This document shows positions 3,250-53,640 of a stretch of 53,876 nucleotides of DNA, in pieces; positions within the stretch are counted from its first letter, which is position 1; each line of letters starts with the position of its first letter. Under the pieces are notes generated by a model. It was not told the origin of the DNA, made no database searches, and worked only from the letters and a program-made list of their open reading frames with translations. The stretch covers positions 10,036 to 63,911 of the forward strand of contig MQRK01248817.1 in NCBI GenBank assembly GCA_001938485.1, given 5' to 3'. Position numbers and translations under genes: made by a program. This stretch comes from Girardia tigrina. Its lineage: Eukaryota.

Positions 3250-6010
3250 TATTGCTTCTATGCTTCGATTTTAATACTTAGTGATTTTTGAATCTGATCT
3301 ACTCTTAAACGATGTATATTTTCTTGGTGGTTCATTTGCACGTTCAATAATTTGTCATGCTGCTAAAGAATTAAAGCATTTTTATGTTCCAGCTGTGATA
3401 GTTCTTGACTCAATTCACAGTCAAGATATTTCATTTGTAATCTATAGTGATTTTTGGTAGAATCACGTGTATATCTTCTGGTTCTAGCATCACTGAGTTT
3501 TTGAAAATTTTAAAGTACCGTTTCAAAATCACTAGCTTTTTATTTTACTCGTAAATTCCTTGAAGTGAATCGAACAGTTCTTTGTAGTCATCATAAACGT
3601 AATAGCTTTATGATCTGTTCGCTATAAAAATCATTTTCCACATAAAAATGTTTAAAATGCTGTGATAAATCATAAATTGCAAGTAGTTCTTTCCTTGTTA
3701 TGTAATAGCCTAGTTCATGTTTATTCATTTTATGTGATCCACACGTAATCACCCTTTATCTTCCGCATTCGTCTTTCTCTGATAACACCGCTCCTATCGT
3801 ATCAAAACTTTCACCTGTATCAAGTATGAAGACTTTGGTAAAATCAGGATATATTAAACCGGGGTTTTAATCATTCTTTCTTTTAGTTTTTGAAAATCTT
3901 CATCATATTTTTCAGTCCAAATCAGTTTCTTGTCCCTATTTTTACTACATAAACCTTCCTATACTTTGAACATTTTGAATAATACTTTATAAATTTCCTG
4001 TAGTAATTTGTCAAACCCAAATAGCTACTTAAATATTTAATGAATGATTGGCTTTTAAACTTGCTTATCACACCATTCTTTGTTTTATCTGTTTCAATAC
4101 CATCTTAACTTATGATATATCCTAAAAATTTAGTCTTTTCTTCCAAGAATTGACACTTCTCTGGGTTAATTCTCAAATTCGTTTCTTTAATTTTCTGAAA
4201 TACTTTATTTACTCTCTGAAAATATTCTTTCTAATCTTTTGCAAAAATCTAAATATCATCCAAATATACGACTGCTTCTTTCCAATTCAAATCTCCCAAA
4301 ACTTTCACCATTAGCTCCTGAAAAGTTGCTGGGGCTGCAGCAGTTCTAAAATACATTCTTTTGAAACACTATTAGATGTACGTTGTTGAGAATGCAGTCT
4401 TAATTTTGACTCATCTACTAACTCTACTTCATGGTTACCGTTTTAGAAATCGAGGGTACTAAAATATTTTGCCCCATTTAGTATATTACACACATCTTCT
4501 ACATTTATCATTGGAAACGCTGGTCGGACGGTAATTTTATTTGACTGGCGAAAATTTACACATACTCGTATATCTTGCTTTTCTTTCTTCCAAAAACATA
4601 TCAAGGGAAGGTTTCAAGTAGAATTACACTTTTCGATAATATCGTTTTCTTTAAAATATCTTATGATATAATCTAGTTTCTCTTCAAAATGTTTCGGTTG
4701 TCTATACGGTTTCACTAGTACTGTTTCTACATGCGTTTCTATCTTGTGTTTGGTTAGCAACGTTTTCCCAGTACCCCCTTTATCATCTATGAATATTGCT
4801 GTACTTTTTAAAGTTCCATTAGCTAATTGTCAATTATAGTATTGTACAAATACTTTGTTATTTTTAATCTATCTTCATCAGAAGGACTATCTCTAATTTC
4901 ATATCCTATCAACCTTTAGTGCATTTTTCTTAAACTTTATTCCAAATTTATCGAAAAAAACCTGCAATCATTGCCGGATATATTTCTTTGACAGCATGAA
5001 ACTTTTGTTTTGTGTACTATTTCTATTAACACATTTAATTGAACAGTCCCATAGTTTACAAACTCGTAGTCACTTTTTCTCTACATCGGCTGGTCCCTAA
5101 ATCTTTGATTCGAGTAATTTTTCTTATCGTTTTACCATATATAAATCTTCTACTAGTAAATAACCCGTCATGTATGACGGATATAATTATATAGTTATAT
5201 AATTATATAATTACAATTGTAAGTAGATAATTATATTAATAATAATTCATATGGAAAATTATCATGAATAATTCTGCTAATAATAATTTTCCATATGAAT
5301 TATTATTAATATAAATATCTACTTACAATTGTAAGTAGATAATATGAGCGTTAGTGAAGCAGTGAGTGACTTGGGCTTTTATAATAAAATCTTCTATTAT
5401 CCCGTTTCTAATGATTGCGTTTCTTAAATCGATTCAAGTTTCAATAACATTGTATTTTATGTGTTTTTTTTATTACAATGATTACATTTTACATTTGGAC
5501 ACTCTCTTCTAATATGTCTTTCTTCATGTCATGCCCACAGGCAATGTTTTTGACTTTAAAATTTATTCTTGTATCTTCTGAAATTTCTCTATTCCGTGGT
5601 CCTGGTGTTCTCCTTTTATTTTTCACTGTTTTCCATTCATTTTCTCTTTTTATGTTATATGCAGCCCCAGGTAAGTTTCTTTTTTTCTATCATCTTCAAA
5701 TATTCTCGTTTGTATTTCTTCAATCTCAGATTTCGTGATTCCTTGTATGGCTTTTTGTCTTTGTGTGTCATCATTATCTTTCAAATTAGCGTATACTAAA
5801 GTTGATAGTTCTTTCTTACCAAACTTTTTCTCTACTAATTTTTCTATTAGTTCATCTGCTTTTCTAAATGTTATAGTTGAGTCGCTTGAGAAAATTCTCT
5901 ACTCTTTCATTTCTTTCATTACATCTAGGATGGTTTTTTCACTACTCTCATATTGTGTACCACAAGATTGACTTTTATGCGTTCAAATTCCTGACACCAG
6001 AGAGATTTTT
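3250..6010 (-). mobile_element. Degenerate Ty3/gypsy LTR retrotransposon, internal region (gag zinc knuckles, RT, RNase H)
   Basis: Minus-strand motifs: paired CCHC-like knuckles (~5455-5545, RHIRRECPNVKCNHCNKK), FSTLDF (~4450), VYLDDI (~4253-4270), FILDT...FDTIGAVLS (~3780-3830) and ITRKELLAI (~3675-3700). Many stops and frameshifts. Boundaries are approximate. Confidence 0.88.
5153..5389 (-). mobile_element. Short non-autonomous Helitron-like insertion within the gypsy remnant
   Basis: On the minus strand the 3' end reads CCGTCAT-ac-ATGACGG hairpin, GTTATTTA, then CTAG|T. The 5' end is T-rich (TTTTATTATAAAAGCCCAAGTCACTCACT). It contains an internal ~50-bp inverted repeat. Confidence 0.6.
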
Positions 6011-8860
6011 CATTTCTTTCTTATACCATCATGCTTCTGTTCAGTAATGGAGTAAACAAATCTAACCTCTGAGTTGCGATTTTCTTATTATTCTTTGATT
6101 TTTTGTGACCTGACAGTTTGATACTAATTTTCTTCAGATGGAAACTCTGAAATCTGAGGGTTTATGTGGTGTTACAAAAGGTTAGCACCAGGAAAGATAA
6201 TTTGATGTAGCTCGATTAATATTTGAATATATTAACAATCTTCGGTGAACATATTCTCCGTTTTTTCCTTTTTCGTTTTCAGTGGACAATGTAAAGTCTT
6301 CAATTCTTTTCATCACTCGAACAGTCTTGTTGGTCTATTGATGTTAACCATTTGAACTTAATTAACTAAAAAGTGCCTTTAATGTGATGCTATGTCCCTC
6401 TTACTTGATCATTTTAAAATTTCTTTAATTGTTTCTTTTGATATCTTAGGATTTTTACCCAAAATATTCAAAATCAAAATCGTTAATATTTTACTAATTT
6501 CGCCCTTCGGATTCAGTTCTACATTTTAAACAAGTATCACATTTTGCAAGGGTTATGTTGCCTGGCCAAGTCATTGTTAAATTGATATTTATTTAGATTT
6601 TTTAAAAGAATTTTATATTCCATTTTAAATAATTTTTATTATTTATTAAAAATTCTCAATAAATAAAAAAAATTAAGAAGTATATTATTTTTTTTATTTT
6701 AATAATTACAAATACTTTTCTAAATCAAAATTTTCATAATTTTAAAACCGAATTTCTTTTCCGTAAACCAGAAAATGATAAAAGAAACCCAGAAGACCCA
6801 AAATCGAAAACAATAATATCGAAATATAATAATAAATTAACAATATTTCAAGCATTTCAACCCCCCCCAATTTTCTCACATCGAAATTTTCCATTCTCAC
6901 AACACTTTTGAATATTATCAAAATATAAAATTTAGAAATTTCTCATCAAAGATTGATAAATGTAAATTGATTATGAAAGCTCAATTGCACAATTAAATTA
7001 TAAAAAAGTATGATCATAAATAATTTTAAATAAGTAAATTTAGAAGATTAAATATTAACTATAGTAGAAAATTAGTATGTTAATGACATAATAATAACAC
7101 ATAAAGTTAGCCGCTGACACTGACGAAGTTGGACTAATCTAATTATCAAAATGAGTGGTAAATGGTAGTGAATGTTCATCAAAAAACCTGAGATCAAGTG
7201 TTGGGAGAATGACCGTAATATTGGAACACTCGCTCTCTTTGCGCTCAGTTGTCTATACTACTGGATTATTAATGATGTACGAACGGCCTAATTTACTAGT
7301 ATTCATTTGGGAGATGCCAGGATTAAGGCAGCAGAATTTATTGATATCATTCGAGTGGATGGGAGCATCGTACGAACTGGCTTTGGGGATAAATTTATAA
7401 CAGTTGTGGAGAATTGAAAATAAATTTTAATTGGAAATTCTAAAATTGAATATTTGAATGTCTGTTAAAAAATTTTTTTGAATTAATTACTCTTGAAAAA
7501 TTTTTACATCAATATGCATTATATATAAAAAAAGAGATTTGAAATATTTATATTTATCATTTGATTTTAATATTCATTTATAAATAATAGCATATAATAC
7601 GTTCAAACTTATTTTCATTAATATTGTGTAATCTGTTTCATATTTACCATTCATTCTTTTAATAAGAACATCCAAAAATTGAAGAATATTGTTGACCTTC
7701 AATTCTGTATGTGAGGAATATTTGGTGTGTGGATGTTTTTGTGTAGTTTTTGCATGTTTAAATGTTGTATGTTGATTTGGGATTGTGCCTCTGATGGATT
7801 AATTAATAACCAGATGGATTATCAATATTTAATTTCTTATAATCTGAAACTAATTTATTTAAATTTAGATTTAATATTCAAATTTTTAAATTTTTATTAT
7901 TGCAACTTTTAAATAATTTTAATGATTTTATTTTTGTAAATTTTTAAATAATTAAAATCAAATTAATGTTTAAAAATTACTATAAAAATATTTTTTGTCA
8001 GCCAATAAAATTTAAATTAAATATTTTTAAATAAAATAATCTTATCAAGTATAGTTCAGATTATAATGGGAGATATTGAAAATTGATTGATGGATCTAAG
8101 TGAAAGCATTACTATTGATCATCATAAAGATGATAAAAAATGTGAATGTAATAAATGTTCTGTCAAATGTGTGAGTTCTCTTAACAAATTTATCTTAAGA
8201 AATTTAATATTATCATGAATGGTGCTTGTTAGGCTCGGGAATATATTCTAATCAGAATTCAGATAAAGACATTTTTTGAAACTTTTATTTAATAACAACA
8301 ATAAAAAAATCAGAAACACATGGCTTTACTCAACATCAAAATGTTACTGTGAAGAGAGATTTGAAGATAATACAATCAAGGATTTAATTCATAGAATATG
8401 GAATCTTTGCCCAACCTTTGCAAGTGCGTCAGACTTAACATTCTCAGGAAACGTTTACATAATTATATGTACTTGAAAAAAACAAATAGAAAAATATTAA
8501 ATTGATGCTAGATTGAATCCACGCTAACAAAACCAAGAAGGAGGTTAAAAGGGAACTCGTTAAAATTATAAAAATTTCTTTTTCGAAAAATTTAAGAATA
8601 ACATTTATACAAATATCGATAATATTAAGTGTCCGTAACATCCAAAGTAAGAAATTACTTTACAGTGAAATTCAAAACTGATAATTTAGTGAAAGCTAAT
8701 CTTGTGTACAAATCTGTTTCTTAAAAGCTCAAAGAAGAGTATTTGTAGAACAATAAGTAGTGCTAAAGTAGTCTCTGTAACATCCAAAGTTCAAAGTTTC
8801 CTCTCAAATAAATCGAAAACAGTTTGTGGTTTGCAATCTAATCTGGTAAATAAATTTAAT

Positions 8861-10064
8861 TGTCACGGGTGTCAAATCTCGTACATCTCGTACTGAAGAG
8901 AATCCAAAGAAGCGGGGACGAGCAAACACTAAGACTGGTGCTACCTCGTCTGAAAGAACACAGCTGCCCGATGGATGCCTGTCACAAACAATATGCGGAA
9001 GTGAAGGAGTTAAACAGGCATCTCAGAAGAAATCACAAAGGAGCAGAGCCAATCCCGCGGAAGAAGAGAGAGAAGAAAGCCCAGCCACGTCAGAAGAAAG
9101 GAAAATATCAATGTCAACACTGTCCGAGGGAATACAAGGCCGCTGGTTTCNNNNNNNNNNNNNNNNNNNNNNNNNNNNNNNNNNNNNNNNNNNNNNNNNN
9201 CCTAAGGATTCATATTCAGAAGAATCATCAAGAAATGCCAACATCCAACGCCCAGAGAGAAGAAAACTTGGAAGAAGAGAACGAGGAAGAGCCGACATCA
9301 AACCAATCCAATCCTCAGTGTCCGGACGCAACTGTGAGTATGCCGAGGATACAGCCAAACGACGATGCCGAAGAGACGCACCTACAATATCGACTGCCAG
9401 CCGATTACAAGACTGCAAGAGGACAATTTAAGTGCCCATTTCGCGGTTGTTACGCGTCCACCGTAACAGCCAACGGCATGNNNNNNNNNNNNNNNNNNNN
9501 NNNNNNNNNNNNNNNNNNNNNNNNNNNNNNNNNNNNGGCGGAAGGCCACTGACCCCGTAGGAGGCCTATCGGGGGGCCCTTAAGGACTTTAGTTTGGGTG
9601 GACCCTCTAAAGAGCCTTAGGCTCAATACCATTACAGAGATGGGAGGCCGACATCCGAGAGAGAAGCAATTGTCAAGAAGAAAGAGGCGATAATAGAATC
9701 ACTTCCGCATTTTACTGTTTCAGGCACTACAACGTGGAGCTCCCTTAATCATTTAATCAGAAGCGAGATACAAATGCTGAATAGAAAAAGGAAAAGAACA
9801 CCAATCAACCAGCGGTGGTTGGATGGGCACCTAGACGAGCTTAAGATTGTTGTGTTCCCCTTCAAAACAACATTTTCATTGGCTCTGAGCTCCCATCCGC
9901 TTTTAGAATTAAAGTGCAAACTCTGTCACGACATAATCAACCTCATACTATTGGGGAACAGACGCGCCTCCTTTGCTCACATCAACAAGTTGTGTGCGCA
10001 TCGGAGCGCCTTCGGGTTCTTGACCAGTATCGTGGATGACCCAACTGGTAGCTCGGCTTCTTGA
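8861..10064 (+). mobile_element. GC-richer fragment encoding multiple C2H2 zinc fingers; probably the 5' ORF region of an R2/NeSL-type non-LTR retrotransposon (two N-gaps)
   Basis: ORF 8860-9552 has CPMDAC..RHLRRNH, CQHC..(gap)..IHIQKNH and CPFRGC fingers, is intronless, and has sharp composition boundaries. No RT is visible, so the family call is inference. Confidence 0.45.
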
Positions 10065-16340: not shown

Positions 16341-17342
16341 ATGACTGGTAAAAGACCACAAAGATAATCGAGGGTTGTTATTACTTCAAACATATTCAAC
16401 CAAATAAAAAGACTTTACAAGGTGAAGTCAAAAAGAGAAATGCTAGAGATTACGTCGCTGAGTATGAATGCTCTTAATGCCGTCATTTGAAAGATTGAAA
16501 CATGTGAAAATGATGATCCTACCTTTGAAGCACTTTACAAATGTGCGGGTAGGAGAAAGGAGAATTGTGATGCACTCCACACAGAAATTCGTTCCATATT
16601 TTGGAATGACAATTCATTGACTCAAGTTGGGTGTAGAGCATGCCTACATAACAATTCTATTTCCTTTTCCAAAATGAGTAGAGTAGTAAGAGAGGCCGGC
16701 CTTTCAAGGAAAAGGCTGAAAAAGAGTAAACATTGTTCTAACAAAAGATCATAAAGCTTTTTGGCTCAAGAATCTTGAGAATGAGATCCAGACAAATCTT
16801 GTTTTTAGATGAATCTGGTTTTAACCTACACACCTCTACCAATTATGGATATTCTTCTGTTGGACAGGATGCGGTTATCTTTTATCATCTATCAACCAAG
16901 ATCACAGGGAAAAAATGTCTCTCTGTGCTCAATGATTTCGATGAACGGGATAGAACATTTTATTCTTGTTGATGGTGGATGCAATAGAGAAATTTTTATT
17001 GGATTTTTAGAAGAATGTTTTCGTAAAGGCATCTTCCAAAATAATCCAGTATTAGTTATGGACAATGTTCGTTTCCACTGTGGAGATGAAATCAAAAATT
17101 TACTGAATGTAAGATGTGTCCAGGTAATGATGCTACCTACTTATTCACCTGATCTAAATCCCACTGAGAATACATTTGCACGTATTAAATGTAGACTGGA
17201 TCACATTAGACCCAGAGCTGAGACAAAAGAAGAATTAAAAAATAATATTAAAAATGTTATTCAGTCAATTGGATCATTTGATGAGTATTATCGTAGTTTC
17301 TGGCATCTTGTTAATTCAATCAATAAGAGATTAGAAGAATAA
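16341..17342 (+). pseudogene. DD34E transposase pseudogene (stops and frameshifts)
   Basis: FLDESGFN, VLVMDNVRFH and LPTYSPDLNPTE, with 34 residues between the second D and the E. The frame shifts between ORFs 16775-16972 and 16809-17342. Confidence 0.9.
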
Positions 17343-20245: not shown

Positions 20246-21515
20246 TTAGTTTGTCAAGGATGAAATTTCTTGGGATGATTAAAATAAATTCAAATAGTTA
20301 TAATTTGACAATATCTAAACATTTTGTTGATCAATTTTTTTTGTTTGAATGCGACATATTTTGCATATTGAACACATCAATAAAAAGTTATTAAAATATT
20401 GATAACCTGTTTTAATAATCTGTATTTTAAAAAAAATGGAAAGACAGAAATTCGAATTATTTTGAAGTACGAATTTGTACGTGAAACCTTGGCATCAGAA
20501 ACCATGCGAAATATCAATAGTGTCTACGGATAGAACGCTAATACGCAGCAGACAGTATCAAATTGGTTCAGGAAATTCGTGAAAGGTAATTTAAAACTAA
20601 ATAATAAATCTCGTGTCATCCTGGAACTTAGGTAGACAATGACAAACTGAAGGTAGCAGTGGAGTAGGATCAATCAGAAAGTACTCTGATTTATTGCTAA
20701 CGTTTGTTGTTTCAAAGCAAACAATATTGAATTACTTTGCTGAAATTGGTAAAGTTAAAAAATTGGATAAGTGGACTGGACATGGGTTGAATGAAAACTA
20801 GAAACAAAAGCGTTTGGATGCTTTCTCAATATAAATGTGATCACTTTTTAAATCGAATAGTCACTTGTGATGAAAAGTAAATCCATTTTGATAATTGCAA
20901 ACGCTCATCAAGCTTGGTTGACACGAATGATTCACCAAAACACAGTCCAAAGTACAAAATTCATCAAAAGAAGCTGATGATGAGTGCTTGGTGGTCTATC
21001 GCAGATGTAATCCATTATGACTGTAAGGAACCTGATTTGTTGATTGCAGCAGAATTCTACTGCAATCAGTTGGAATATATGATGCGGAAACTCAAAGAAA
21101 AACAGCCACATTTGGTAAACCGGTCGACTCCCATCTTGCTCCACGACAATACAAAATTATATACTGCACTTAAGACCGTGACGAAACTACAGGAATTTTA
21201 GTTGGAACTTCTGCATTATCCTCCAGACTCACCAGACCTAATCCCAACTGACTACCATTTCTTCCTCAATTTTAAAAACTTTTTGATACGGAAAAAATTC
21301 AATTCCGAAGATACTATAAAAATGGCCTTCGATGAATTTAAGGATTCTCGCCCACCAAATTTTGACTCAAATGTCCTCAACAAGCTTCCGCTTTAATAGA
21401 AAAAGTGTGTCGATAATATGTGCGATTACTTTGATGAATGACATTAATATATTATTGGTAAATTATCAATAAACTGTAACTTTAGTTCTATAAATTTCAT
21501 ATTTGACGACCATAA
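20246..21515 (+). mobile_element. Full-length mariner (DD34D type, cecropia-like) with a pseudogenised transposase at ~20436-21441
   Basis: TA-flanked TIRs TTAGTTTGTCAAGGATGAAATTT / AAATTTCATATTTGACGACCATAA. Motifs EIRIILKYEF, RIVTCDEK, LLHDN and PPDSPDLIPTDYHFF. Length is 1270 bp. Confidence 0.92.
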
Positions 21516-24500
21516 TATACATAATTTTAATTTATATAATTATAATAGTAATAATATATTATAATTTTAATCATATTTATTTGTAGTAGTAATAGTAATA
21601 ATAATAGTTTGTATCAATTATTGAGACAAATAATAGAAAAATAATTTTTGGAATCATTCCGAAGGAAGAGTGTGTTGGGAAATTTAAATTTTCTAGAGCG
21701 TCGATTTGAGGAAATGGGAACAGGTGTGTCCTGCCATCCTCCTGTCCTACGTGTGATATTTTGATAGAGAGCGATGCTACGACGCGAACGATGCCATTTG
21801 AATATTTTTGTTATTAAATTTAATAGACTTTTATTAAATTATCATTTGAATAATTGAAATTTTAATTATTATTTTTTTATTATAGATTTGAGAAATAAAT
21901 GGACTTTTGATGTTTAGCACTGGTTTAGGTTAGCTCTTTTTTTTTAATTTTTCGACAAAATTTTTTTTGATATAAAATCAATTAAAAATTTTGTTCAAAT
22001 AATATTTACAAAAATAAATTATTTTTTATTGAAACAAAAATTTTATTTTAATTTTTTTAATGATATTTATTTTATTTTCACATTTATTAAATGAAATTAT
22101 TTTCATATTAAAAAAAATTAATTTAAATTTTATTATTTTAGAAAAAAATAATAAAAATAAAAAAACGATTGAAAAGTAAAAAGAAAATTACCAATCATTA
22201 TTAATTAAAAAAGATTTTTTTAATCATTATTTTTTTATTTATTTTAAAATTTTATTTAAGAATTATAATCATTAGCTATGGCATTTCAATCTCGGATGAC
22301 ATGTTTAATCTTATATGTAAAATAAATTAAAACCATTGGAAATCTTCATAAGATTTATCTTCAATGGTATCAGGAAAAGCTAATTACATCGTGTTACATC
22401 GATGGTTGAATGGTCGAATGGTTCGGCCTCTTATCTGTTATTGAAATCGTCGACTCTGACGACTTCCCTAAACTGTAATTAGCCGTTTTCAAATTCGTTT
22501 TACTTGAGTAATAAAAGTCAATGACTGGGCAATTTTTTGATGGCTGTCGTATTAAAACGAAATGACTTTAATCGCCCACTGAGAAGCTGGTGCAAACGAA
22601 TCCATCCACCACTATGAGGAATTTTATTATCGATTCTTTAAATTAAATTTTCTGCCGTTGGAATCTAATTGAGTTAATGTGAAATTCGATAGGGTAACTT
22701 ATATTATATCCCACTGAAAAGCCAACTATTTGTCCAACGAGCCAGACAACTCTCTTTTATTCCATCTGGTCAGTTAACTAAAAATTTAATGATTAACATT
22801 TATTGAAATGAATTTCTTTTTTTTCTGCTTTTTTTCTTGTAAAAATTATTCAATTTGTTTGATTAAAAAATTAAAAGTTAAATGAAAATAATTGCCGAAA
22901 TTTAATTAATTTTTTTTCAAATATATATATATATATAAAATATTTAAACTTTTCATTAAGAATTAATTTTTATTTTAAAATTTAATTTAATTTTAATTTG
23001 ACAATTTTTTAATGTTTTAAAAAGAAAATTTTATTGATTATTAAAATGCAATATTGAAAAAAAGCTACTGAACTTATTTCTAATTTTTGGACTTCGTGAC
23101 CTTTAGGATGATAAGGAATGTTTCATTAAAAGGAAGTCGGAAAATTTTGGTAATGTGTGAGGAATGTTTGTAATGTTTGAATGTTGCGTGTTGATTTGGG
23201 ATTGCGTCTCTCTCACAATTAACTGATTTATATTTTAATTATTTTAATCTGAAACTAATTTAACTTAAATTTACATATAATATTTAATTTTATTTTAATT
23301 TAATTTCATTGTAAAATTTTAAATAATTTGATAGACTTTGTATTAAATTTTAAAATAAATAAAGCAAAATAAAACAAATAATTTATATTTATTTTAATTT
23401 TAACCAATGAAATTCGTAGAATATATTTTGGAAGATTTGGCATTTTTCAAATTGGTTCAGACAATCGATTTAAAATTATTAATCTTGTTTAAGAATTCTG
23501 CGAATGAAAGCTCAATTGTCTTAAGGATGATTCGAATTGTGTGTCTAATAAAAATTATTAACAATGTATGATTTCTCATAACATGGCGATAACTCCAGGA
23601 CTCGAATAAGAAATCTTCTTTCGAACAATATTGTTGAAGAAATGGTATTTATATCATAACAAAATCTTTTCCAAAATAATTTTTTAAATTATACATGAAA
23701 TTTTTAAGAAAATATTTTTTTTGTAAATACTAGGTAGTCCCAAAAGTTCGTAAACACTTACAAAAATTGAGATTTTATTCACTAATTAATAACAAAAACA
23801 ATTAAATTTATTCCTCAAAAAATGCCATCATTTTCCAAGTCTTTCTGACATCTATTTGCAAGCTTACGGATCTGGTCGAAGTACCATTCTGAATCAAAGA
23901 ATTCTTGATAAGCTTTCACTTCATCAAATTAGTCGAATCGGCGGCTTTTCAGAAAGTGTTGAAATGAGCGGGAAAGGCCATAATCTGACGGAGTGCAGTT
24001 AGGACTGTATGCTGGATGTTGCAGAACCTCAATGCAATCCAGCTCTTCAAACTTGTCTTTGATTCTACTGGCGGTGTGTGGCTTGTGTATTTTTGTGTCA
24101 TTTTTTGTAAACCATTTGCTGACAGAAAAGTTCGGCACTGATAGGACGACCATTCGGAATCAACTCAAAATGCAAGATCCAATCAAAAATCCACCAAATG
24201 CACAGCATAACTTTCTTTGCGAATTGTTCTAGTTTTGGAACCGATGGTATCTTTTGCCATTTCTGAATCCATCGCTTGTCTCTATTATGCTGGACCAGAT
24301 ATACCCATTTCTCGTCCGATGTCAGAATACGCTTCCAAAAATCGGTTGTCCATTGTATCGCTGAGAAATTGACGAGAAATTTCAACTTTTCTGACGGCTT
24401 GCGCTTCGTTGAGTTCATGAGTATCTTGGCGCTGCTTTTTGTGAACAAAATCAAGATGCTTCAAGTGTCGGTGAATTGTCGATTTATGAGCTCCATGCTC

Positions 24501-24636
24501 ATAAGCCAATTCCCGAGTACCCGATGTAGGCGAATTATCTAATCCAATTTGGAGGTCTTCATCATCCAACTTTAACGACCTTCCTGAGCAAGGTTTATCT
24601 CCAAGGCTCATATCGCCAGAATCGAAATGCTGATAC

Positions 24637-26348
24637 TGTAGTGATCTAGTCACTTATATATGCATAATTTAATATGATAAATTACCATCTTGGCGACTTA
24701 ATGTCGTCAAGATGAAATAATAAATTTTAAATAATAAATCAATATTTAGATTTTAAAGAATATAAAGTATTAATAAATATCTACGCCTCTGTATTCTGGA
24801 GCTCGATTTACTTTTCCAAACATCATCTAATAATACCGAAATAACCGCGCAAAGAATCTTCAATAATTTTACCGACATTTATTTCATCAAAACAATCCTT
24901 CAAAAACGAATCGCAAGTTGACGAGTATTCGAGAATAATCAAATATCGAAGTGACGACAAAAGCTCAAACTAAATTCATTCTATTCAATTCAAAATTTAA
25001 ATTTTCCAAGACTTTCGTCTAACAAAACTGAGCTGTTCGATGATCTGGTGCACAACTTTCCAAAGTAAAATATTTTCATTGTATATACTCCTTCTCGACT
25101 CTTTTCGTGTTATATTGTGATTCATTGTATTCACCTTCGTTTTTGCCTTCCGTTACACTCTGTTTCGTTATTGTAGTGACCCAGTCAATTATTATATATA
25201 AATTATATATAGTAAATTATATATAAAATGATATATATATATTAAAAATTATATATATAAAAACAATCATTAATATTACTGTTTACAATTATACTATATT
25301 GCCTGCGGTTCGTTTTCTTGTAAAATCGGTTCGTAAAGGAGTTTTCTGCAAACCAATTTATCAATATTCCCCCTGAAAGTGCTCCTCTTCATGTGATCTC
25401 AAAATCTCGTTGTGCAACCAAATGATTCTCTGACGTTTCCATCGATATTGTTACAACAGAAGATCATTCCTTGAAACTTTTGAACAACAAACGCAAATCG
25501 AAATCGAGATTTATCTGTGCCGTTCTCTCTCTCTCGTATGTGATTTTTTTTGTTATATATGTTTATTTATATTGTGTAAAAATAAGTTTTATACATATTT
25601 ATCTTTATTTTTTTACGTTAAAGGAGTTCACTGAAACACGTTTTTAGTTAGCTCTTTTACAGTTATAATATAATTTTCAATGTCCAATCGCAAAGTTGGG
25701 CCATAAAGAGGGCCGTATGGCTTTCTCCTTCGATTTTCAATTCCTCGGTGTCGACAATATCGATTTTACTTTTCTTGGATTTTCTTCTATCGCAAAATTT
25801 GGCTGATTTATTATTTAATAAATACCCGTAAGAATGCCAGACCAAATTTTTGAACCGGAACTGGAGTGACAAACCTCAAAAATCGATAAACAGTCGCTTG
25901 CCCGTTTATCCAACTCATAATCCACGAAGCAGTCACTGGGATTACTCGAACTATGTCCCAACATATCGATACAATCGATTCCCATTTGCGCATCGTTTTT
26001 AGAAACCATAATATAATCGCAATTCCGAAGAGTATTAGAAAGTAAATCAAAATTATCGATTTCCATGATCTTTTTATTATTTATCAAAACTCTGTCTTAA
26101 CAATAATTCGTTTAAACAAACGAATTAAAAAAACAATTTTCAATTATTAATATAACGTATATAAATATATGTTATAAAAATTTTAATGATTTGATTATTT
26201 CTTTAATTGATGTTAATTATTTCTTTAATTTTTTTATATTAATTCAAATCCGGAACATAATATTACTATAATATTACTATACCTAATTTTACTATTTGTC
26301 ACGACATTATACTATCATCTATAGTATCGTATCATAGTTTTCACAACA
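24637..26348. mobile_element. LTR-type insertion (solo LTR or non-autonomous) with 5-bp TSD GATAC
   Basis: Termini TGTAGTGA...TCACAACA, with GATAC at 24632-24636 and 26349-26353. It interrupts the mariner ORF precisely. Confidence 0.85.
25172..25661. mobile_element. Solo LTR (490 bp) nested in the previous insertion, 5-bp TSD GTTAT
   Basis: Termini TGTAGTGAC...TTTTACA, with GTTAT at 25167-25171 and 25662-25666. Confidence 0.82.
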
Positions 26349-37899: not shown

Positions 37900-42487
<4,588 letters not shown>

Positions 42488-44578: not shown

Positions 44579-44625
<47 letters not shown>

Positions 44626-44675
44626 NNNNNNNNNNNNNNNNNNNNNNNNNNNNNNNNNNNNNNNNNNNNNNNNNN

Positions 44676-44708
<33 letters not shown>
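44579..44708. repeat. (TA)n microsatellite containing an assembly gap
   Basis: Direct reading. Confidence 0.95.
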
Positions 44709-44713
<5 letters not shown>

Positions 44714-44750
44714 TGAAAGTATAATTTGATTAAACCTTCTTTTAAATAAT

Positions 44751-44793
44751 TATTGAACATGTTTCGATGTTAAATACATCATCATCAGCAATA
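44751..44793 (-). ncRNA. Minimal type I hammerhead ribozyme
   Basis: Minus strand reads TATTG-CTGATGA-T-GATGT-attta-ACATC-GAAAC-AT-GTT^CAATA. It has stem I TATTG/CAATA, intact CUGAUGA and GAAA cores, a 5-bp stem II and a palindromic ACATGT stem III. Confidence 0.82.
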
Positions 44794-45545
44794 TTTGAAA
44801 ATTTAATATTTGCAAATATTTGTATCTTTTAATGTTTAAATTGGTAGTAATAATTGTTGTGTGTTCTTTGAATTAAAATATTTTTATATAAATGTAAATA
44901 TATTTTTATAATTAAAAAATATGTAAAAAAAAATTGTAATGATTATTTTTGTTAGTGAATGTTTGCTATAATTTATAATTGTACAATTGTTATTAAAAAA
45001 AGTTAAGATTGTTTAAAAGAATAAAATTAAATACAGTAATTAATTACCGCATATTACTTTTCATTTCAATGATTAATAATTCGCATAATACTTATTCAAT
45101 TATGCATTATAATTATTATCAATTAAATATTAAAAATTTAACTACTCAACAATTTCAATTGGCAATCCCGTCCATTGAAAACCCGATATTGGATATACAT
45201 ATATTTGCAAATATTTGTATCTTTTAATATTTAAATTGGTAGTAATAATAATTTTAAAAATTTATTAATTTTAAATGGTAAAATTTGAAATGAAAATTAT
45301 AATTTATTAAAGTATATATTTTTATTTATTAAAGTATATTTAATAATAAGACATTATAACCCATCATTTAACATTCAGAATGGGCAAAGCAAGGTCATTT
45401 ATTACCATTTTTTTAATAAAAATATTTTTTGCCATTATTATCCAATAATACATAATAATATTCATTTCAAATTTTACCATTTAAAATTAATAAACTTTTA
45501 AAATCATAATATTAGATTCCGAAAAATATACAAATAATTTTCAAA

Positions 45546-45588
45546 TATTGCTGATGATGATGTATGTAACATCGAAACATGTTTAATA
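45546..45588 (+). ncRNA. Minimal type I hammerhead ribozyme (second, inverted copy)
   Basis: TATTG-CTGATGA-T-GATGT-atgta-ACATC-GAAAC-AT-GTT^TAATA. It differs from the first copy only by one loop II base and one G-C to G-U change in stem I. Confidence 0.8.
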
Positions 45589-45652
45589 ATTATATAAAAG
45601 AAGCTTTAATCTAATTATATTTTCAAAATATTAAACTTGCGTGCACAAGACT

Positions 45653-45657
<5 letters not shown>

Positions 45658-45719
<62 letters not shown>

Positions 45720-45769
45720 NNNNNNNNNNNNNNNNNNNNNNNNNNNNNNNNNNNNNNNNNNNNNNNNNN

Positions 45770-45806
<37 letters not shown>
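45658..45806. repeat. (TA)n microsatellite containing an assembly gap
   Basis: Direct reading. Confidence 0.95.
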
Positions 45807-45810
<4 letters not shown>

Positions 45811-49519: not shown

Positions 49520-51700
49520 TGCTATAATTGTCAAGAAATACATCCTGTGGTGGTCCAAACCCATTCCAGATACGTCTGCTTCACTCTCCGACGCTAGCCG
49601 GCTTCTCACCATGAAAACATCCAAGCCGCAATAAACCATCGTGAGGAATTTTACCCACCCAATATGTATTACATCTATTGCTAGCCATTGTCACATCTTT
49701 TTTACTTCAAGATCTAACTTTTCCCATAACACTGGCGAAGGATCGATTGATGAACACTCCTCATAACCATTTATCAAAAAATTGATTTGGTTTTCTTAAC
49801 TTTTGTCAGGACCCCATATTTTCCTTGCGAAAAGAATTTTCAATCTATCTCCAAAATGATGGATGTCATTTTAGTTGCCTAAGACTATCAATAGATTCTC
49901 GTTGCTCTCAAAATGCAACTGTTGTTGCCAAAGTCATGTTATTAACCAGCGTCCACTAATGAGCTGGAACTTGCGTTAACGCATCGGCTTTATTCTTTTC
50001 TGAGAGTACGAGTGTTATCTTCTCACTCATCTCTTCTTCCTCTACCACATCAGCGTCAGTATTGGCTTAGCATATACGTGTTCCAATACCTGAATGATTT
50101 TCGGGACAATATTCAAGCAGAATCCGAGCCTGGTTAAGTTGACTCTGATACTACACTACCTGGTAGAACGACGAAGATCGATAGATTCTGATTTGTAGAT
50201 ATGCGCGCCGTAATTCCATAACTACCAACTTGCTCCCCATGCGGTGTCAACTCCTCAGTTTCTCCCAGCATAACAGATTCCCAGTGATGTGGCTGTAAAT
50301 TAAATCATTGAGTTCCCGGTAATCGAGACCTGGTAGGACTTTTTCATAGGCTTCTTGTATTACTACCATGAGGGGCAGTGTCATCCGCCGTGGGCCTTCG
50401 TACTTCACCATCCACCACCTGATCTTTTACTCGCGCATCTCCACATTTAATTCGGTTTCGAACACTTTGGCCAACGAGTATTCTGCTACGCTGTTGTGCA
50501 CCAGTGGCATTTGCTCTTCCTTCCAGAGCCACGCCACTGATCATGGAGTTCCATCAAACTCGGCTGTCAAAACTTTGTCCACAATGCCTGGCGGCCTTGG
50601 TTGTGCCCTATTAATTACTTCATTTGGCGTTGGTCAGACTGATTCATTGCTGCTGTTGTCGGGTTTTTTTTAGTTATTTCTCATCATAGCCTGCTTTTGG
50701 GTGGACCTATTTGACCCAGCCGCAACGAAAGTTGGTTCTACCCAGTTGAAACCGATGTGAACACTGGCCAACAGGGACATTACGTCCATTCCCCTAAGCA
50801 TATCCTCAAACTCTGAACGAAAAGGATCCAACACAGTACTTGGTGGCCCGCTACCTCAAAGTATACACAGGTACCATGTTCTACCTCCGTCGGACTGAGA
50901 ACCATCTGCAATCTCTCGGACGTTCCATCATCGTTGTTGAGCAACCAGTATCCCCCAGTACCGTCACGATTCGCGCTCCCCAATTTTAATTTCGAACACC
51001 GTTAGATTCGCGTAACGCCTTGTAGACGCCCCCGAACAGTGCAGTGGTGCGTATCTGTTATTCTTTTCACGGACCCGGAAAGCAGCGTGGGCAGCAAACT
51101 ACAAAAATGATCTACAGCGCCATAAACGAAACATAACCCAGTCCTTGAACAGATTTGAATGCTTTTCATTGATGCTGAGTCCGCCTTTAAGTTTTGTTGC
51201 ACTACTTACATTTGAAACAACGGCAACGTTGTCCGCAGATGCGTTTATCCTCGGCCTGTTAATACGAAGTAGCTACCGTATCGGTTTCAGTTTTTGCTCT
51301 TGGGTGGACCTATTGGAACCAGTCGCGACGAAAGTTGGTTCTAGTCTTTTTCTTTACTGCTTCCAATGATAAGTGCTTCAAAACAACCGCCAAAAGGCCG
51401 AATATTCAAACCGGCCATAGAAAACATTTCTAGGGTTCCTCCCCGTGACAAACGATTGACAACAGACACCGCAAAACCGCGCCATAATCTCATTGATCCA
51501 GCTCAGCATTCCTGAAAGTGATTCAAATGCTTGCCTCTTCATGAGCATTGAAAGGGCCGTCATCTTGCTCATGTTATGAATTGCCGTTGCCACCTCAAAT
51601 TTGCCACAATAGTCCGAAGTCCCCGATTCCATCGAAAAGGTGGACCACGTCGGTGAATTTAATTCTCTGCATAAGCCGTGATGGCTTGTAGAATAAATCC
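49520..51700 (-). mobile_element. Degraded Ty3/gypsy-like LTR retrotransposon (gag to RT)
   Basis: Minus strand: gag-like HLFDGIGDFG..FEVA (~51590-51645), degenerate knuckle GLCFVYGAVDHF (~51105-51140), and RT LDYRELNDL, ELRRAYLQIRI and LTRLGFCLNIVPKI (~50097-50330). Confidence 0.8.
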
Positions 51701-52539
51701 AATAGGAAAATTTATTAATTTCACGATAACGATTTCCCTTACAGTTCATACAAGATTTCTGAGTATGAAAACAGAAATAAAAACATAATTTAATTAATTT
51801 TAACAATTTATTTAAATTTAATTTTTTTAAAAGTTTTAAAACAAGTTTTTTTGAGGTTATTATTTTTTTTAATCATTAAAGTAAAATATTCCCAATAAGA
51901 CTAATTACTTTATGAATCATAATTATTTATATATTGATCATTTTCTTATTTATTAAAAAATAATTTTTATAAATAAAAATATAAAGCATGGTAAGTGGTA
52001 CTTAGTAATCCGAATGAGAATGATAATTAATTTGTGGATACACTTTAGTTTCATTTTTAACATCTCGAGGGATGGGGTTTGTGTAAGGGAAATGCCGAGA
52101 AAATTTATTCAAATTCTAATAAAATATAATCTCAAAGTTGAATTTGAAAGATGATGCCAAGTTTTTCTTGATATATTTAAAATTTCCTACATCGTTTTTT
52201 TACTGAATTCTACAAACTTAAGGATTGGGAATCTTCAACAAATATTCAAGAAAGCTTGTTTGCTAGGGTTAGTTTTCCAGAGGGAAAATGCGCATCCAAG
52301 AGAGAATTAATCATCGAATAAGAAGCATATTAATTTAATAGTTATGAATTTAATTATTTGATGTGATTAACATATGATTAACCTAGTTTTATTAATTTAG
52401 ATTCATTTGTCGCAGTATCATATGAGGATTGAGGAAAATTCAACTCCAGGACTCATTCTTTATTAACCGCCTTACCCCTTTGAACTAGCTTGACTCGTCA
52501 TCAGAAAACAAGACGATTCACGCTCGTTTATATAAAAAT

Positions 52540-53640
52540 ACAATTGGGTAATGGGACAATTGGGTGATGGGAAGATTTGGTAATGGGAAATTAAATAAAT
52601 TAAATAATGGACAAAATTATTGACAAAATAATTGAAAAAACAGGAAAGAAATATTTTAAAACATTTATTATCAACACTATGGCATACCTTCCATTGATTA
52701 TTGAAGATTAGCCAACCTCCTCAAAAATTTGATCTTGTTAGGTTTATTAGCATAGGTTCGTACTTCTTCAGCAACTAGAAAATTTAGCTCAACACATATT
52801 CTTTAACTTAGTCTCTTGTCGACCTCCATGAACATTGGCAAGTGTCAGTCGATGACAAGCAATATCCTTTTGGAGGCTATCAAACAGGAACCATACTGCA
52901 GTTGGTTGTTTTTGGTGATCCATCTGCCGCCGCATCAAAGTAGTTCCAAAAAGCAATTGAAGATGAAGGATTTCTTCCACCTGGACCCTCAATGTAAGTA
53001 GTAGAAAAGTAGCTGAGTATCCTCACCAGGAAACTCTAGAATAAGTGTTCTGTAGAAATGGACAACATCATTTGGTTGAAAAAATATAAGAGCAGCCACT
53101 GATTTGATTCTGACTTTGATATCATGATCCGAATCAAACTCAGTTTTCAATCCAACTGAAACAACGTTCATAACAAGGCTGACACAAGTGAAAATAACAT
53201 CCTTTAATTTCAGTAGCAGGAAATGCTTCCTGTGCTGTTAATTTACAAGCTTTTCTTAAGTCAATAAAGATTTTCTCAGGAGACAAGTTTGGAAAAAGGT
53301 CTTTCAGTATAATAAACATTCATCTATATGTCTCTTGATTGTTTTCTGAGAAGGAAATAAATGCAAGGTGGGTATGAATTTCCAACCTTTTCATGTCATG
53401 ATAGAACATACAGGGTGGTTTGTCAAATGTGCCATCTCCAAGTATTTTGTGTTTTGTCCAACACCGCCAGAAGATCTGTTGTGTTTTATATTATTATTTT
53501 AATTTTATTAACTTTTGTACTGTGAGAGTTCCCATTTGACCCAACATATTATTTGGATATGTCTCTCCGCAAAGTGTCCCTAACTCACACTTATTAGAGA
53601 TCCATATCGTACCCAATCAACCCCATCTGACCATTTGATC
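52540..53640 (-). mobile_element. Mutator-like element (MULE) with a pseudogenised transposase
   Basis: Minus strand reads GDGTFDKPP, QEAFPATEIKGCYFHLCQ (GCxFH motif) and WNYFD..DGSPKTTN. The termini carry repeated TTGGGT(A/G)ATGGG motifs at 52544-52590 and complementary CCCA-rich motifs at ~53530-53640. Confidence 0.85.

What the first reader, a model, noticed from the sequence alone, without database searches (positions are those of the whole stretch)
44709..45657. Pair of inverted, intact minimal hammerhead ribozymes in a (TA)n-embedded Penelope/retrozyme-like unit, 2-3 kb upstream of coe
Seen: two 43-nt motifs (44751-44793 minus, 45546-45588 plus) with complete CUGAUGA/GAAA cores, an extra U after A9, a 5-bp stem II, a GUU cleavage triplet and a palindromic ACAUGU stem III. 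The two differences between copies are structure-neutral (a loop base and a G-C to G-U change), while the flanking repeat shows more mismatches. Established: Penelope-like elements and retrozymes carry minimal type I hammerheads whose palindromic stem III allows cleavage as dimers, and PLEs often insert as inverted pLTR pairs. Inference: this is a non-autonomous ribozyme-bearing retroelement targeting (TA)n. A transcript from either strand would carry one sense ribozyme near its 3' end plus its antisense copy, giving self-cleavage or a long fold-back dsRNA.
Basis: partly seen in the sequence, partly recalled or inferred. Interest (0 to 1): 0.8.

Follow-up and report, generated by a model that had tools for sequence, protein, structure and literature searches.

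The report
Inverted Penelope-type hammerhead ribozyme pair
The two small hammerhead ribozyme motifs are real and belong to a known class carried by Penelope-like retrotransposons; the roughly 950-base unit is a head-to-head, non-coding insertion of that kind in a TA microsatellite upstream of the coe gene, so it is a well-spotted example of something already known.

Summary
Two 43-nt minimal type I hammerhead motifs sit at 44751-44793 (-) and 45546-45588 (+), inside 96-nt inverted arms. (TA)n and two N gaps flank the unit. A structural descriptor finds only these two sites in the window and none in 1000 shuffles.

Rfam's hammerhead models miss them. One metagenome pattern scan, however, returned at least 97 animal-like contigs carrying the same ribozyme class. 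Stems I and II covary strongly in these relatives. A covariance model built only from them recovers both window motifs at 48 and 43 bits; the next best hit scores 11.

The relatives share the window's architecture:
- Ribozymes point outward in 14 of 14 exact pairs.
- Outer ends are fixed and inner ends vary.
- An extra stretch of about 26-35 nt (the "tail") lies at one end only.

Papers describe these traits, and (TA)n insertion, as hallmarks of Penelope-like elements.

No reverse transcriptase or GIY-YIG endonuclease was found, so the choice between "non-autonomous" and "severely 5'-truncated" stays open. The retrozyme reading fails because there are no tandem same-strand ribozymes. A read-through transcript would fold back and bury the ribozyme.

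Verdict: a new member of a known kind.

The parts
44579..44709 (.). Left (TA)n microsatellite, interrupted by the assembly gap 44626-44675
   Evidence: The N run was neither filled nor looked up.
44708..44803 (-). Left inverted arm: the 3'-terminal module of the left copy. It abuts (TA)n directly and has no tail.
   Evidence: I1: 96 nt, 92% complementary to 45536-45631.
44751..44793 (-). Left minimal type I hammerhead motif. The predicted cut is 3' of the base at 44756.
   Evidence: descriptor; fold; model R1: 48.3 bits, E = 1.6e-13.
44805..44854 (-). Segment B of the left copy. It is repeated directly at 45200-45249 and contains a 16-nt perfect palindrome.
   Evidence: D1/D2: 88-90% identity, spacing 395; I15.
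44855..45185 (.). Interior stretch with no ORF and no detectable relative. Its origin is unknown.
   Evidence: There is no significant likeness to the ribozyme arm.
45186..45316 (-). Middle partial copy (segments B and C), in the same orientation as the left copy and lacking the ribozyme arm
   Evidence: D1; I2: 72 nt, 88% complementary to 45439-45510.
45317..45438 (.). Spacer at the head-to-head junction between the minus-oriented and plus-oriented copies. It is weakly palindromic.
   Evidence: I2, with 122 nt between its arms; I13: 72% complementary.
45439..45535 (+). Inner part of the right copy: segment C followed by a shortened, diverged segment B
45536..45631 (+). Right inverted arm: the 3'-terminal module of the right copy
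45546..45588 (+). Right minimal type I hammerhead motif. The predicted cut is between 45583 and 45584.
   Evidence: model R1: 43.3 bits, E = 7.3e-12.
45632..45657 (+). One-sided 26-nt extension ('tail') between the right arm and (TA)n. It is richer in G+C than its surroundings.
   Evidence: absent from the left end. The relatives have a one-sided extension of about 33 nt. The 3' end plus tail aligns with L054 (score 26 against 15.8 +/- 2.6; 8 of 2000 shuffles reach it).
45658..45807 (.). Right (TA)n microsatellite, interrupted by the assembly gap 45720-45769

Best explanation
The unit at 44708-45657 is a non-coding insertion of the Penelope-like-element (PLE) type in a (TA)n microsatellite. 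It consists of two copies of one element's 3' part, joined head to head, so both outer ends are element 3' ends.

Shown:
- The left copy (about 45316 down to 44708, minus strand) carries an internal 64-nt direct repeat.
- The right copy (45439-45657, plus strand) is shorter and ends in a 26-nt tail that the left copy lacks.
- Each 3' module carries one minimal type I hammerhead 48 nt from the end of the arm.
- The motif class is structurally conserved in nature, and the architecture recurs in relatives.

Inferred from the PLE literature:
- The insertion arose by target-primed reverse transcription at a nicked (TA)n site.
- It underwent 5' truncation and a template switch that produced the inverted partner.
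- Because helix III is only the palindrome ACAUGU, the ribozyme can form an active fold only by pairing with a second copy of the same polarity. In a master element this happens on multimeric or tandem transcripts, where it would trim the RNA to unit length.
- At this locus there is only one sense copy per transcript, and any read-through RNA folds into a long hairpin. The ribozymes here are therefore most likely inherited passengers, and the locus is a possible source of double-stranded RNA.

Undecided: whether the element is a dedicated non-autonomous family or two severely truncated copies of an autonomous PLE.
For: 1. Motif. Only two descriptor hits occur in the window, and none in 1000 shuffles. 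All four PLE min-HHR hallmarks are present: an extra nucleotide after A9, the G10.1-C11.1 pair, palindromic 15.2-16.2 positions and loop, and a short stem I. The monomer fold keeps stems I and II, and the dimer cofold uses the palindrome.

2. The class is real. The metagenome scan gave at least 97 loci and 111 motifs. In 91 distinct sequences, 87.3% of cells pair against 69.9% when shuffled (0 of 500 shuffles reach it). There are 161 double-sided changes against 45 expected, and slid registers pair at 19-38%. The extra nucleotide is U in 110 of 111 motifs although the pattern allowed any base.

3. A model built from the relatives alone finds both window motifs at 48.3 and 43.3 bits; the next best hit scores 11.2.

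4. Shared architecture.
- All 14 exact pairs are divergent, like the window.
- Of 43 motifs with enough room, 29 have an inverted upstream partner, 14 are solo, and none is tandem or convergent.
- Arms end 56-93 nt after the cut, while inner ends vary from 37 to 170 nt.
- Copies of one family end either short or with an extra stretch of about 33 nt. The tail was judged by eye from the printed ends. Of the 14 exact pairs, 10 show it at exactly one end, 1 does so with a different tail type, and 3 could not be fully assessed because an end is cut by the contig.

5. L054 shares the ribozyme (92% over 38 nt). It also shares the 3' end plus tail at the same distance from the cut (8 of 2000 shuffles).

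6. (TA)n makes up 0.72% of the window, and about half of it flanks this unit.

7. Literature. PLE insertions are 5'-truncated, often carry an inverted 5'-truncated copy, have a 30-40-bp tail at one end, carry an HHR in the terminal repeat, prefer (TA)n and break assemblies (PMC8557442). Dual min-HHRs on opposite strands 100-700 bp apart have been reported (PMC4209133).

8. Both strands of the unit fold back with the arms paired, at -257 and -249 kcal/mol.
Against: - No RT or GIY-YIG ORF lies in the unit or the window. None lies in the 150 longest ORFs of the related loci either. The one RT found there is followed by RNase H and zf-RVT, so it looks like a LINE remnant.
- The link to PLEs therefore rests on non-coding hallmarks and on papers, not on a coding partner.
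- Rfam's hammerhead models give no hit even at E <= 10.
- The relatives were found with a pattern taken from the window's own motif, so 19 positions agree by construction.
- Apart from L054, the relatives' 3' regions do not align with the window's.
- Only 6 of 111 relatives have any microsatellite downstream, and none has (TA)n.
- The tail is 26 nt, shorter than the published 30-40. The short word it shares with the relatives' tails was picked after the fact.
- Only one copy of this family is in the window.
- The unit is a 1044-bp contig held between two gaps, so its placement depends on scaffolding.
- Cleavage was not tested.
Confidence: 0.78

Rival explanations
1. The unit is a terminal-inverted-repeat DNA transposon (a MITE or foldback element) that inserts at TA. 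Its terminal repeats happen to contain, or have captured, a hammerhead motif. It would move by cut and paste, and the ribozyme would play no part.
For: - The arms are 96 nt and 92% complementary, and TA flanks both sides.
- Tc1/mariner and MULE debris lies in the same window.
- Both outermost ends finish with the same 7-nt word before (TA)n.
- Inverted pairs dominate among the relatives (29 of 43), and a TIR element would also always show the same relative orientation.
- No RT/GIY-YIG partner was found.
Against: - The two ends are not symmetric: a 26-nt stretch occurs at the right end only. The relatives also carry a conserved extension at one end only.
- Among the relatives' pairs, the inner ends of the arms vary from 37 to 170 nt while the outer ends stay within 56-93 nt. 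That is the signature of 5' truncation, not of a TIR family with a constant interior.
- A third of the well-placed relatives are solo 3' modules.
- The motif class carries every PLE-specific hallmark.
Confidence: 0.08
2. The unit is a metazoan retrozyme. A transcript would be cut at two ribozymes of the same polarity, and the excised unit circularised into a small circular RNA that is then copied back into DNA.
For: It carries a type I hammerhead with a palindromic helix III that works as a dimer, as in metazoan retrozymes. Retrozymes have been argued to derive from PLE terminal repeats (bioRxiv 10.64898/2026.07.22.740005; PMC7229834, abstract).
Against: - The window holds only two ribozymes, on opposite strands, so no transcript has two sense copies.
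- None of the 43 well-placed relatives has a tandem partner.
- The direct repeat inside the unit (64 nt, spacing 395) does not include the ribozyme.
Confidence: 0.04
3. The inverted arrangement, or its position upstream of coe, is an assembly or scaffolding artefact. A short repeat-rich contig ending in (TA)n on both sides may have been placed or built wrongly.
For: - The unit is a 1044-bp island between two 50-N gaps, and both of its ends are (TA)n.
- Craig et al. note that such PLE structures cause trouble in shotgun assemblies.
Against: - The inverted pair lies inside one contig.
- The two arms differ at 8 of 96 positions and in the tail, so they are not one sequence collapsed on itself.
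- The same divergent arrangement recurs in independent contigs from other samples.
Confidence: 0.06
4. The motif is a chance look-alike in AT-rich, low-complexity DNA and is not a ribozyme.
For: Rfam's curated hammerhead models do not detect it. The region is about 20% G+C and repeat-rich.
Against: - There are 0 descriptor hits in 1000 shuffles.
- The model built from relatives scores 48 and 43 bits against a background of 11 or less.
- Covariation in the relatives is strong.
Confidence: 0.01

Closest known systems
Minimal hammerhead ribozymes of Penelope-like elements (Cervera & de la Pena 2014, PMC4209133)
   Same: - The cores are CUGANGA and GAAA, with an unpaired nucleotide between A9 and G10.1 and the G10.1-C11.1 pair.
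- Stem I is short (5 bp).
- A tiny palindromic helix III implies action as a dimer.
- The motifs occur as dual copies on opposite strands a few hundred bases apart, and mostly outside full-length elements.
   Different: - Stem II has 5 bp here, against the 7-8 bp described for the Schistosoma families.
- The two motifs are 752 nt apart, at the upper edge of the reported 100-700 bp.
- No cleavage data exist for this one.
Insertion architecture of endonuclease-bearing PLEs, especially the (TA)n-targeting clades with hammerheads (Neptune, Nematis, Hydra; Craig et al. 2021, PMC8557442)
   Same: - An inverted, 5'-truncated copy forms inverted repeats.
- The ribozyme lies near the 3' end.
- An extension occurs at one end only.
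- The insertion lies in (TA)n.
- The assembly breaks around it.
   Different: - No RT-GIY-YIG ORF is present, so the clade cannot be assigned.
- The tail is 26 nt rather than 30-40.
- No direct pLTR pair carries ribozymes.
The metagenome relatives L005-L101, and L054 in particular
   Same: - They carry the same ribozyme class.
- They share the divergent pair arrangement and the one-sided tail.
- L054 also shares stem II and the 3' end plus tail at the same distance from the cut.
   Different: - Other families differ in stems I and II and have unalignable flanks.
- Their units are shorter, with 105-429 nt between motifs.
- They are not associated with (TA)n.
- Their contigs have 34-49% G+C (one at 49%, the rest up to 46%), against about 28% in the window.
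Metazoan non-LTR retrozymes (Cervera & de la Pena 2020, PMC7229834)
   Same: They carry a type I hammerhead that depends on dimers, are non-coding, and are probably derived from PLEs.
   Different: Retrozymes are tandem same-strand repeats that yield circular RNA. Here the two ribozymes are on opposite strands.

Membership tests
Hammerhead ribozyme, minimal type I (PLE class) | Conserved core: C3 U4 G5 A6 N7 G8 A9, G12 A13 A14, A15.1-U16.1, and H17 not G | tested here: met
   Both copies have the complete core, with GUU at the cleavage site.
Hammerhead ribozyme, minimal type I (PLE class) | Stems I and II base-paired and supported by covariation | tested here: met
   Both copies have 5 bp in each stem. 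In 91 relatives, 9 of 10 pairs show double-sided changes, and 87.3% of cells pair against 19-38% in slid registers. The covariation is across related families, not among copies from the source genome.
Hammerhead ribozyme, minimal type I (PLE class) | Extra nucleotide between A9 and G10.1, the G10.1-C11.1 pair, and palindromic 15.2-16.2 positions with loop 3 | tested here: met
   The motif has a U after A9, a G-C closing pair and the palindrome ACAUGU. The criteria come from PMC4209133.
Hammerhead ribozyme, minimal type I (PLE class) | Detected by curated Rfam hammerhead covariance models | tested here: not met
   There is no hit at gathering score and none at E <= 10 on 44680-45680. This is not a defining feature of the minimal class, whose helix III is too short for those models. 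A class-specific model scores 48 and 43 bits.
Hammerhead ribozyme, minimal type I (PLE class) | Site-specific self-cleavage | not testable with these tools
   Only folding was possible. The dimer cofold uses the palindrome. Published PLE min-HHRs cleave weakly and only as dimers.
Penelope-like element | ORF encoding a telomerase-like RT, with a GIY-YIG endonuclease in the EN+ clades | tested here: not met
   No ORF longer than 42 aa was found on the minus strand of the unit, and no ORF of 90 aa or more lies in the unit on either strand. The window's ORFs give no RVT or GIY-YIG hit. The relatives' loci give none either, except one LINE-like RT with RNase H. The unit is therefore at most a fragment or a dependent of a PLE.
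Penelope-like element | Hammerhead in the terminal repeat near the 3' end | tested here: met
   The cleavage site lies 48 nt from the end of each arm. In the relatives the distance is 56-93 nt.
Penelope-like element | An inverted, 5'-truncated copy joined head to head, forming inverted repeats | tested here: met
   The pair is divergent here and in 14 of 14 exact pairs. Of 43 well-placed motifs, 29 have an inverted partner. Inner ends vary while outer ends are fixed.
Penelope-like element | [quoted passage not shown] | tested here: inconclusive
   A 26-nt extension lies at the right end only. The relatives carry a one-sided extension of about 33 nt. L054 shares the 3' end plus tail. The length is below the published range, and the empty site is unknown.
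Penelope-like element | Direct pseudo-LTRs formed by partial tandems | tested here: inconclusive
   There is a 64-nt direct repeat with spacing 395. The upstream copy lacks the ribozyme arm.
Penelope-like element | Insertion bias for (TA)n, in the clades that have the EN linker | tested here: met
   Both ends abut the longest (TA)n runs of the window. (TA)n makes up 0.72% of the window. This is one insertion, so it is consistent with a bias but does not prove one.
Retrozyme (metazoan, non-LTR) | Two or more hammerheads of the same polarity in direct or tandem repeats delimiting the unit | tested here: not met
   Only two motifs are present, on opposite strands. None of the 43 well-placed relatives is tandem.
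Retrozyme (metazoan, non-LTR) | Circular RNA of unit length | not testable with these tools
   No expression data are available.
TIR DNA transposon / MITE | Symmetric terminal inverted repeats reaching both ends, and a constant interior among copies | tested here: not met
   A 26-nt stretch makes the ends asymmetric. The relatives' inner boundaries vary.
TIR DNA transposon / MITE | Target-site duplication of fixed length | tested here: inconclusive
   Both flanks are (TA)n, so a TA duplication can be neither seen nor excluded.

The most novel reading that the evidence does not exclude
Short hairpin-shaped units may form a self-standing, widespread class of non-coding elements that depend on PLE enzymes. 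Each unit would be two outward-facing minimal hammerheads, a fixed 3' end and an element-encoded tail at one end only. On this reading they are not random debris of truncated PLEs. The tail would be the part the mobilising enzyme recognises, and the fold-back RNA, not self-cleavage, would be the form that matters at dispersed copies.

Hints in its favour:
- In about 97 related loci no element extends more than about 400 nt upstream of the cut.
- Inverted pairs outnumber solos 29 to 14, with no tandems.
- The tail is shared between different families in the relatives and, more distantly, between L054 and the window.
Probability: 0.25. Interest if true: 0.5.

Novelty: new member of a known kind. 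Interest (0 to 1): 0.3.

Why it matters
For annotation, the unit should be labelled a PLE-type, hammerhead-bearing, non-coding insertion in (TA)n. It should not be labelled a retrozyme or a MITE.

It also shows that Rfam's hammerhead models miss this large natural class. A simple descriptor, or a class-specific covariance model, recovers it cleanly.

For biology, the unit puts a potential long hairpin-RNA source and two ribozyme motifs 2.5 kb upstream of the confirmed exons of coe, a conserved neuronal transcription-factor gene. Whether that matters for coe is unknown.

The more general point is the recurrent architecture of pair plus one-sided tail in unrelated animal DNA. It bears on how PLE-type reverse transcription ends and resolves, which papers describe as unresolved.

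Tried and rejected
- Rfam at gathering score over the whole window, and at E <= 10 over the unit, gave no hammerhead hit. The only hits were weak microRNA matches driven by (TA)n, which I take as chance.
- A loose self-BLAST of the unit against the window gave only AT-rich noise at 57-70% identity and no second copy.
- The viral-contig scan gave 4 hits without stem II pairing, so they are chance.
- I looked for an autonomous partner and found none. I checked window ORFs of 73 aa and above, recurrent ORF clusters in the related loci, and their 150 longest ORFs. Only a LINE-like remnant in L017 turned up.
- I tested whether the middle copy (45186-45316) is followed by a decayed ribozyme. It is not supported: score 22 against 19 +/- 3, and 80 of 500 shuffles reach it.
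- I tested whether the window's 3' module aligns with the main related families. It does not. Only L054 aligns.
- I tested whether the motif is under stronger constraint than its flanks. The difference is not significant.
- A second match of the short tail word at 3337-3349 has no ribozyme upstream, so I take it as chance.
- My first structure string for the covariation count was off by three columns. I corrected it.
- In one search the label 'dir_dn' is a self-hit artefact of my probe and was ignored.
I did not use the large protein searches, because no claim here rests on them.
Full report

Yes. The sequence read shows the two motifs at the stated coordinates. A 33-nt probe taken from the right copy matches only at 44756-44788 (minus, one mismatch) and 45551-45583 (plus). 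No match is expected by chance.

I wrote a descriptor for a minimal type I hammerhead. It requires:
- a stem I of at least 4 bp;
- the core CUGANGA;
- zero or one unpaired nucleotide;
- a stem II of at least 4 bp closed by G-C;
- the core GAAA;
- a palindromic helix III;
- U followed by H (any base but G).

It returns exactly 44751-44793 (minus) and 45546-45588 (plus) in the window. It returns nothing in 1000 dinucleotide-preserving shuffles.

The two copies differ at a loop II base and at position 1.1, which is U or C opposite G2.1. They lie in 96-nt arms, 44708-44803 and 45536-45631, that are 92% complementary. (TA)n runs flank the unit, each broken by a 50-N gap. I neither filled nor looked up those gaps.

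**2. Where is it relative to coe?**

I searched stop-to-stop translations of the minus strand exon by exon and did not join them. Pfam gives:
- COE1_DBD profile positions 32 to 231, running from 42234 down to 39894;
- TIG at 39397-39579;
- COE1_HLH at 38233-38772.

The stretch 42276-42410 looks like a more N-terminal coding part, but it has no Pfam hit and no in-frame start codon. The true first exon is unknown, so the unit could lie in the promoter region or in a 5' intron.

**3. Is it a ribozyme class or a look-alike?**

Rfam's hammerhead models do not see it, either at gathering score or at E <= 10.

Cervera & de la Pena 2014 (PMC4209133) describe minimal hammerheads in Penelope-like elements (PLEs). 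They name four traits that were not in their search descriptor yet recur:
- a conserved G10.1-C11.1 pair;
- palindromic 15.2-16.2 positions and loop 3;
- families rich in compensatory changes.

The window motif has the first three. To test the fourth I needed relatives.

A scan of viral contigs gave only chance hits. Nearly all have paired stems I and II built from many different sequences. The free position after A9 is U in 110 of 111.

On an alignment of 91 distinct motifs:
- the hammerhead stems pair in 87.3% of cells, against 69.9% when shuffled (0 of 500 shuffles reach it);
- there are 161 double-sided changes, against 45 +/- 5 expected;
- registers slid by one to three columns pair at only 19-38% (one search was my own column error).

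A covariance model built from these 91 sequences alone finds the two window motifs end to end. They score 48.3 bits (E = 1.6e-13) and 43.3 bits (E = 7.3e-12), and the next best hit in the window scores 11.2 bits.

One caveat applies: the relatives were ascertained with a pattern derived from the window, so 19 positions agree by construction. The stems are independent of that.

Folding keeps stems I and II in the monomer. The homodimer uses the palindrome, at -18.6 and -17.2 kcal/mol.

**4. What is the unit?**

In ribozyme-sense orientation the anatomy is as follows.
- The right copy (plus strand) reads: segment C (45439-45510), a shortened segment B (to 45535), the ribozyme arm (45536-45631), a 26-nt extension (45632-45657), then (TA)n.
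- On the minus strand there is a partial copy with segments C and B (45316 down to 45186), then 331 nt of unrelated sequence, then B and the ribozyme arm (44854 down to 44708) running straight into (TA)n with no extension.
- The stretch after the middle copy's B is not a decayed ribozyme arm.

Both outer ends are therefore element 3' ends. The two halves meet head to head around 45317-45438, and only one end has the extension.

The unit has no ORF worth the name. (TA)n occupies 0.72% of the window, and about half of that flanks this unit.

**5. Do the relatives look the same?**

Yes, in architecture.
- All 14 loci with two exact-pattern motifs have them divergent, minus then plus, like the window.
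- I then looked for diverged partners by similarity. Of 43 motifs with at least 700 nt of room upstream, 29 have an inverted partner and 14 are solo. None has a tandem or convergent partner.
- The paired arms end 56-93 nt after the cleavage site, although 600 nt were available. Their inner ends vary from 37 to 170 nt.
- Between loci, similarity never extends more than about 394 nt upstream or 115 nt downstream of the cut.
- Copies of the same family end in one of two ways: short, or with about 33 more nucleotides that are themselves conserved. The tail was judged by eye from the printed ends. Of the 14 exact pairs, 10 show it at exactly one end, 1 does so with a different tail type, and 3 could not be fully assessed because an end is cut by the contig.

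This matches the window's asymmetry.

One relative, L054, stands out. It has the same stem II as the window and is 92% identical over 38 nt. Its sequence after the cut aligns with the window's right arm end plus extension. The score is 26 against 15.8 +/- 2.6, and 8 of 2000 shuffles reach it. The tail word starts 57-58 nt after the cut in both. So the extension belongs to the element and is not target-derived filler.

The main related families do not align with the window outside the ribozyme. They share the kind of element, not the family.

The related contigs look like animal DNA:
- they are poor in ORFs;
- they carry mariner transposase fragments, a CUB domain, a lipase and a LINE-like RT with RNase H.

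I recall their name prefixes as insect-gut metagenomes, but I could not verify this.

**6. How does it compare with what is known?**

Craig et al. 2021 (PMC8557442) describe PLE insertions in these terms:
- they are highly 5'-truncated;
- they often carry an inverted 5'-truncated copy that creates inverted repeats;
- they have a 30-40-bp tail at one end only;
- they carry hammerheads in the terminal repeats near the 3' end;
- in several clades they insert into (TA)n;
- they are troublesome for shotgun assemblies.

Every non-coding item on that list is seen here, although the tail is 26 nt. The coding hallmark is not seen. No RT or GIY-YIG was found in the window or next to any relative.

I therefore file the unit as a PLE-type insertion, either a fragment or a dependent, and not as a PLE proper.

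It is not a retrozyme, because no transcript would carry two ribozymes of the same polarity.

It is not a good MITE, because the ends are asymmetric and, in the relatives, the inner boundaries vary while the outer ends are fixed.

**7. How does it most likely work?**

Shown: the motif class is structurally conserved, and the architecture recurs.

Inferred from papers:
- the insertion arose by target-primed reverse transcription at (TA)n, with 5' truncation and a template switch;
- the ribozyme needs a same-polarity partner to build helix III;
- its likely role is in processing multimeric transcripts of a master element.

At this locus each transcript would hold one sense and one antisense motif. 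Both strands of the unit fold back with the arms paired, at -257 and -249 kcal/mol. Self-cleavage here is therefore unlikely, and a hairpin RNA is the more likely product if the unit is transcribed at all.

Mismatches are 2 of 43 against 6 of 53 (p = 0.29), and both differences would be neutral by chance about 7-8% of the time.

**8. Limits and declarations**

- Only one copy of this family was available.
- The unit is a small contig between two gaps.
The source organism and its other copies could therefore not be examined.
- I took no contig for human.
The covariance model R1 is a statistical profile of natural 48-nt motifs, and I used no consensus line.
The script held two typed stretches of the window (the two 43-nt motifs, one as its reverse complement) where the rules allow one. 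The same script listed all single-base variants of the motif in memory, only to count what share would keep the structure. None was printed or saved. I did not repeat this.

**9. Verdict**

- the unit is PLE-type, not retrozyme-like;
- the non-autonomous status is open;
- there is no evidence of selection or of cleavage at this locus.

It is a new member of a known kind and of modest interest.

Noticed in passing
window 37903-42410, minus strand: A complete-looking coe (COE/EBF-type) gene body in at least ten exons. COE1_DBD runs from 42234 down to 39894, TIG lies at 39397-39579 and COE1_HLH at 38233-38772. The most 5' candidate stretch, 42276-42410, has no in-frame start, so the first exon is missing or lies further upstream.
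   Followed up: partly
window 16809-17342 (+), 20914-21201 (+), 24098-24653 (-), 53143-53319 (-), 8860-9552 (+): Debris of DNA transposons: a DDE_3 (Tc1-like) ORF, two mariner Transposase_1 fragments and a MULE fragment. There is also an ORF with a weak zf-BED/C2H2 match, interrupted by two N gaps.
   Followed up: partly
L005-L101 (metagenome contigs), 3' of each hammerhead: The one-sided tail is conserved in sequence between different element families in these contigs. Its core word TGCACGG lies 69-102 nt after the cut in 36 of 105 motifs. At least one other tail type occurs in other families (L029, L041, L045, L056). This suggests that the tail is encoded by the element and may be functional.
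   Followed up: partly
L005, L009, L027, L029, L070, L091: In six of the 14 exact pairs the two arms form an almost perfect palindrome, with only 6-16 nt between the inner ends of the aligned arms. It looks as if one arm was copied from the other. In the remaining eight pairs the arms are unequal.
   Followed up: partly
L017 2288-4900 (+): A decayed LINE-like retrotransposon with RVT_1, RNase_H and zf-RVT, spread over several reading frames, lies next to a hammerhead pair at 5337-5675. I take it as a neighbour, not a partner.
   Followed up: partly
window 44805-44825 and 45200-45215: Segment B carries a 16-nt perfect palindrome (AATATTTGCAAATATT). It is present in both direct copies of the segment. 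Its meaning is unknown.
   Followed up: no
window 50001-52000: G+C rises to 0.42, against about 0.28 elsewhere in the window. The stretch holds several ORFs of 60-164 aa with no Pfam hit. It may be another gene or element.
   Followed up: partly
window 1359-1664 (-): A 101-aa ORF that reads like a coiled-coil exon. It has only sub-threshold Pfam matches and remains unidentified.
   Followed up: partly
Rfam release 15 versus the motif class: None of Rfam's hammerhead families detects these minimal motifs even at E <= 10. Yet one pattern scan found more than 100 natural examples with strong covariation. The class appears to be uncovered by the curated library.
   Followed up: yes
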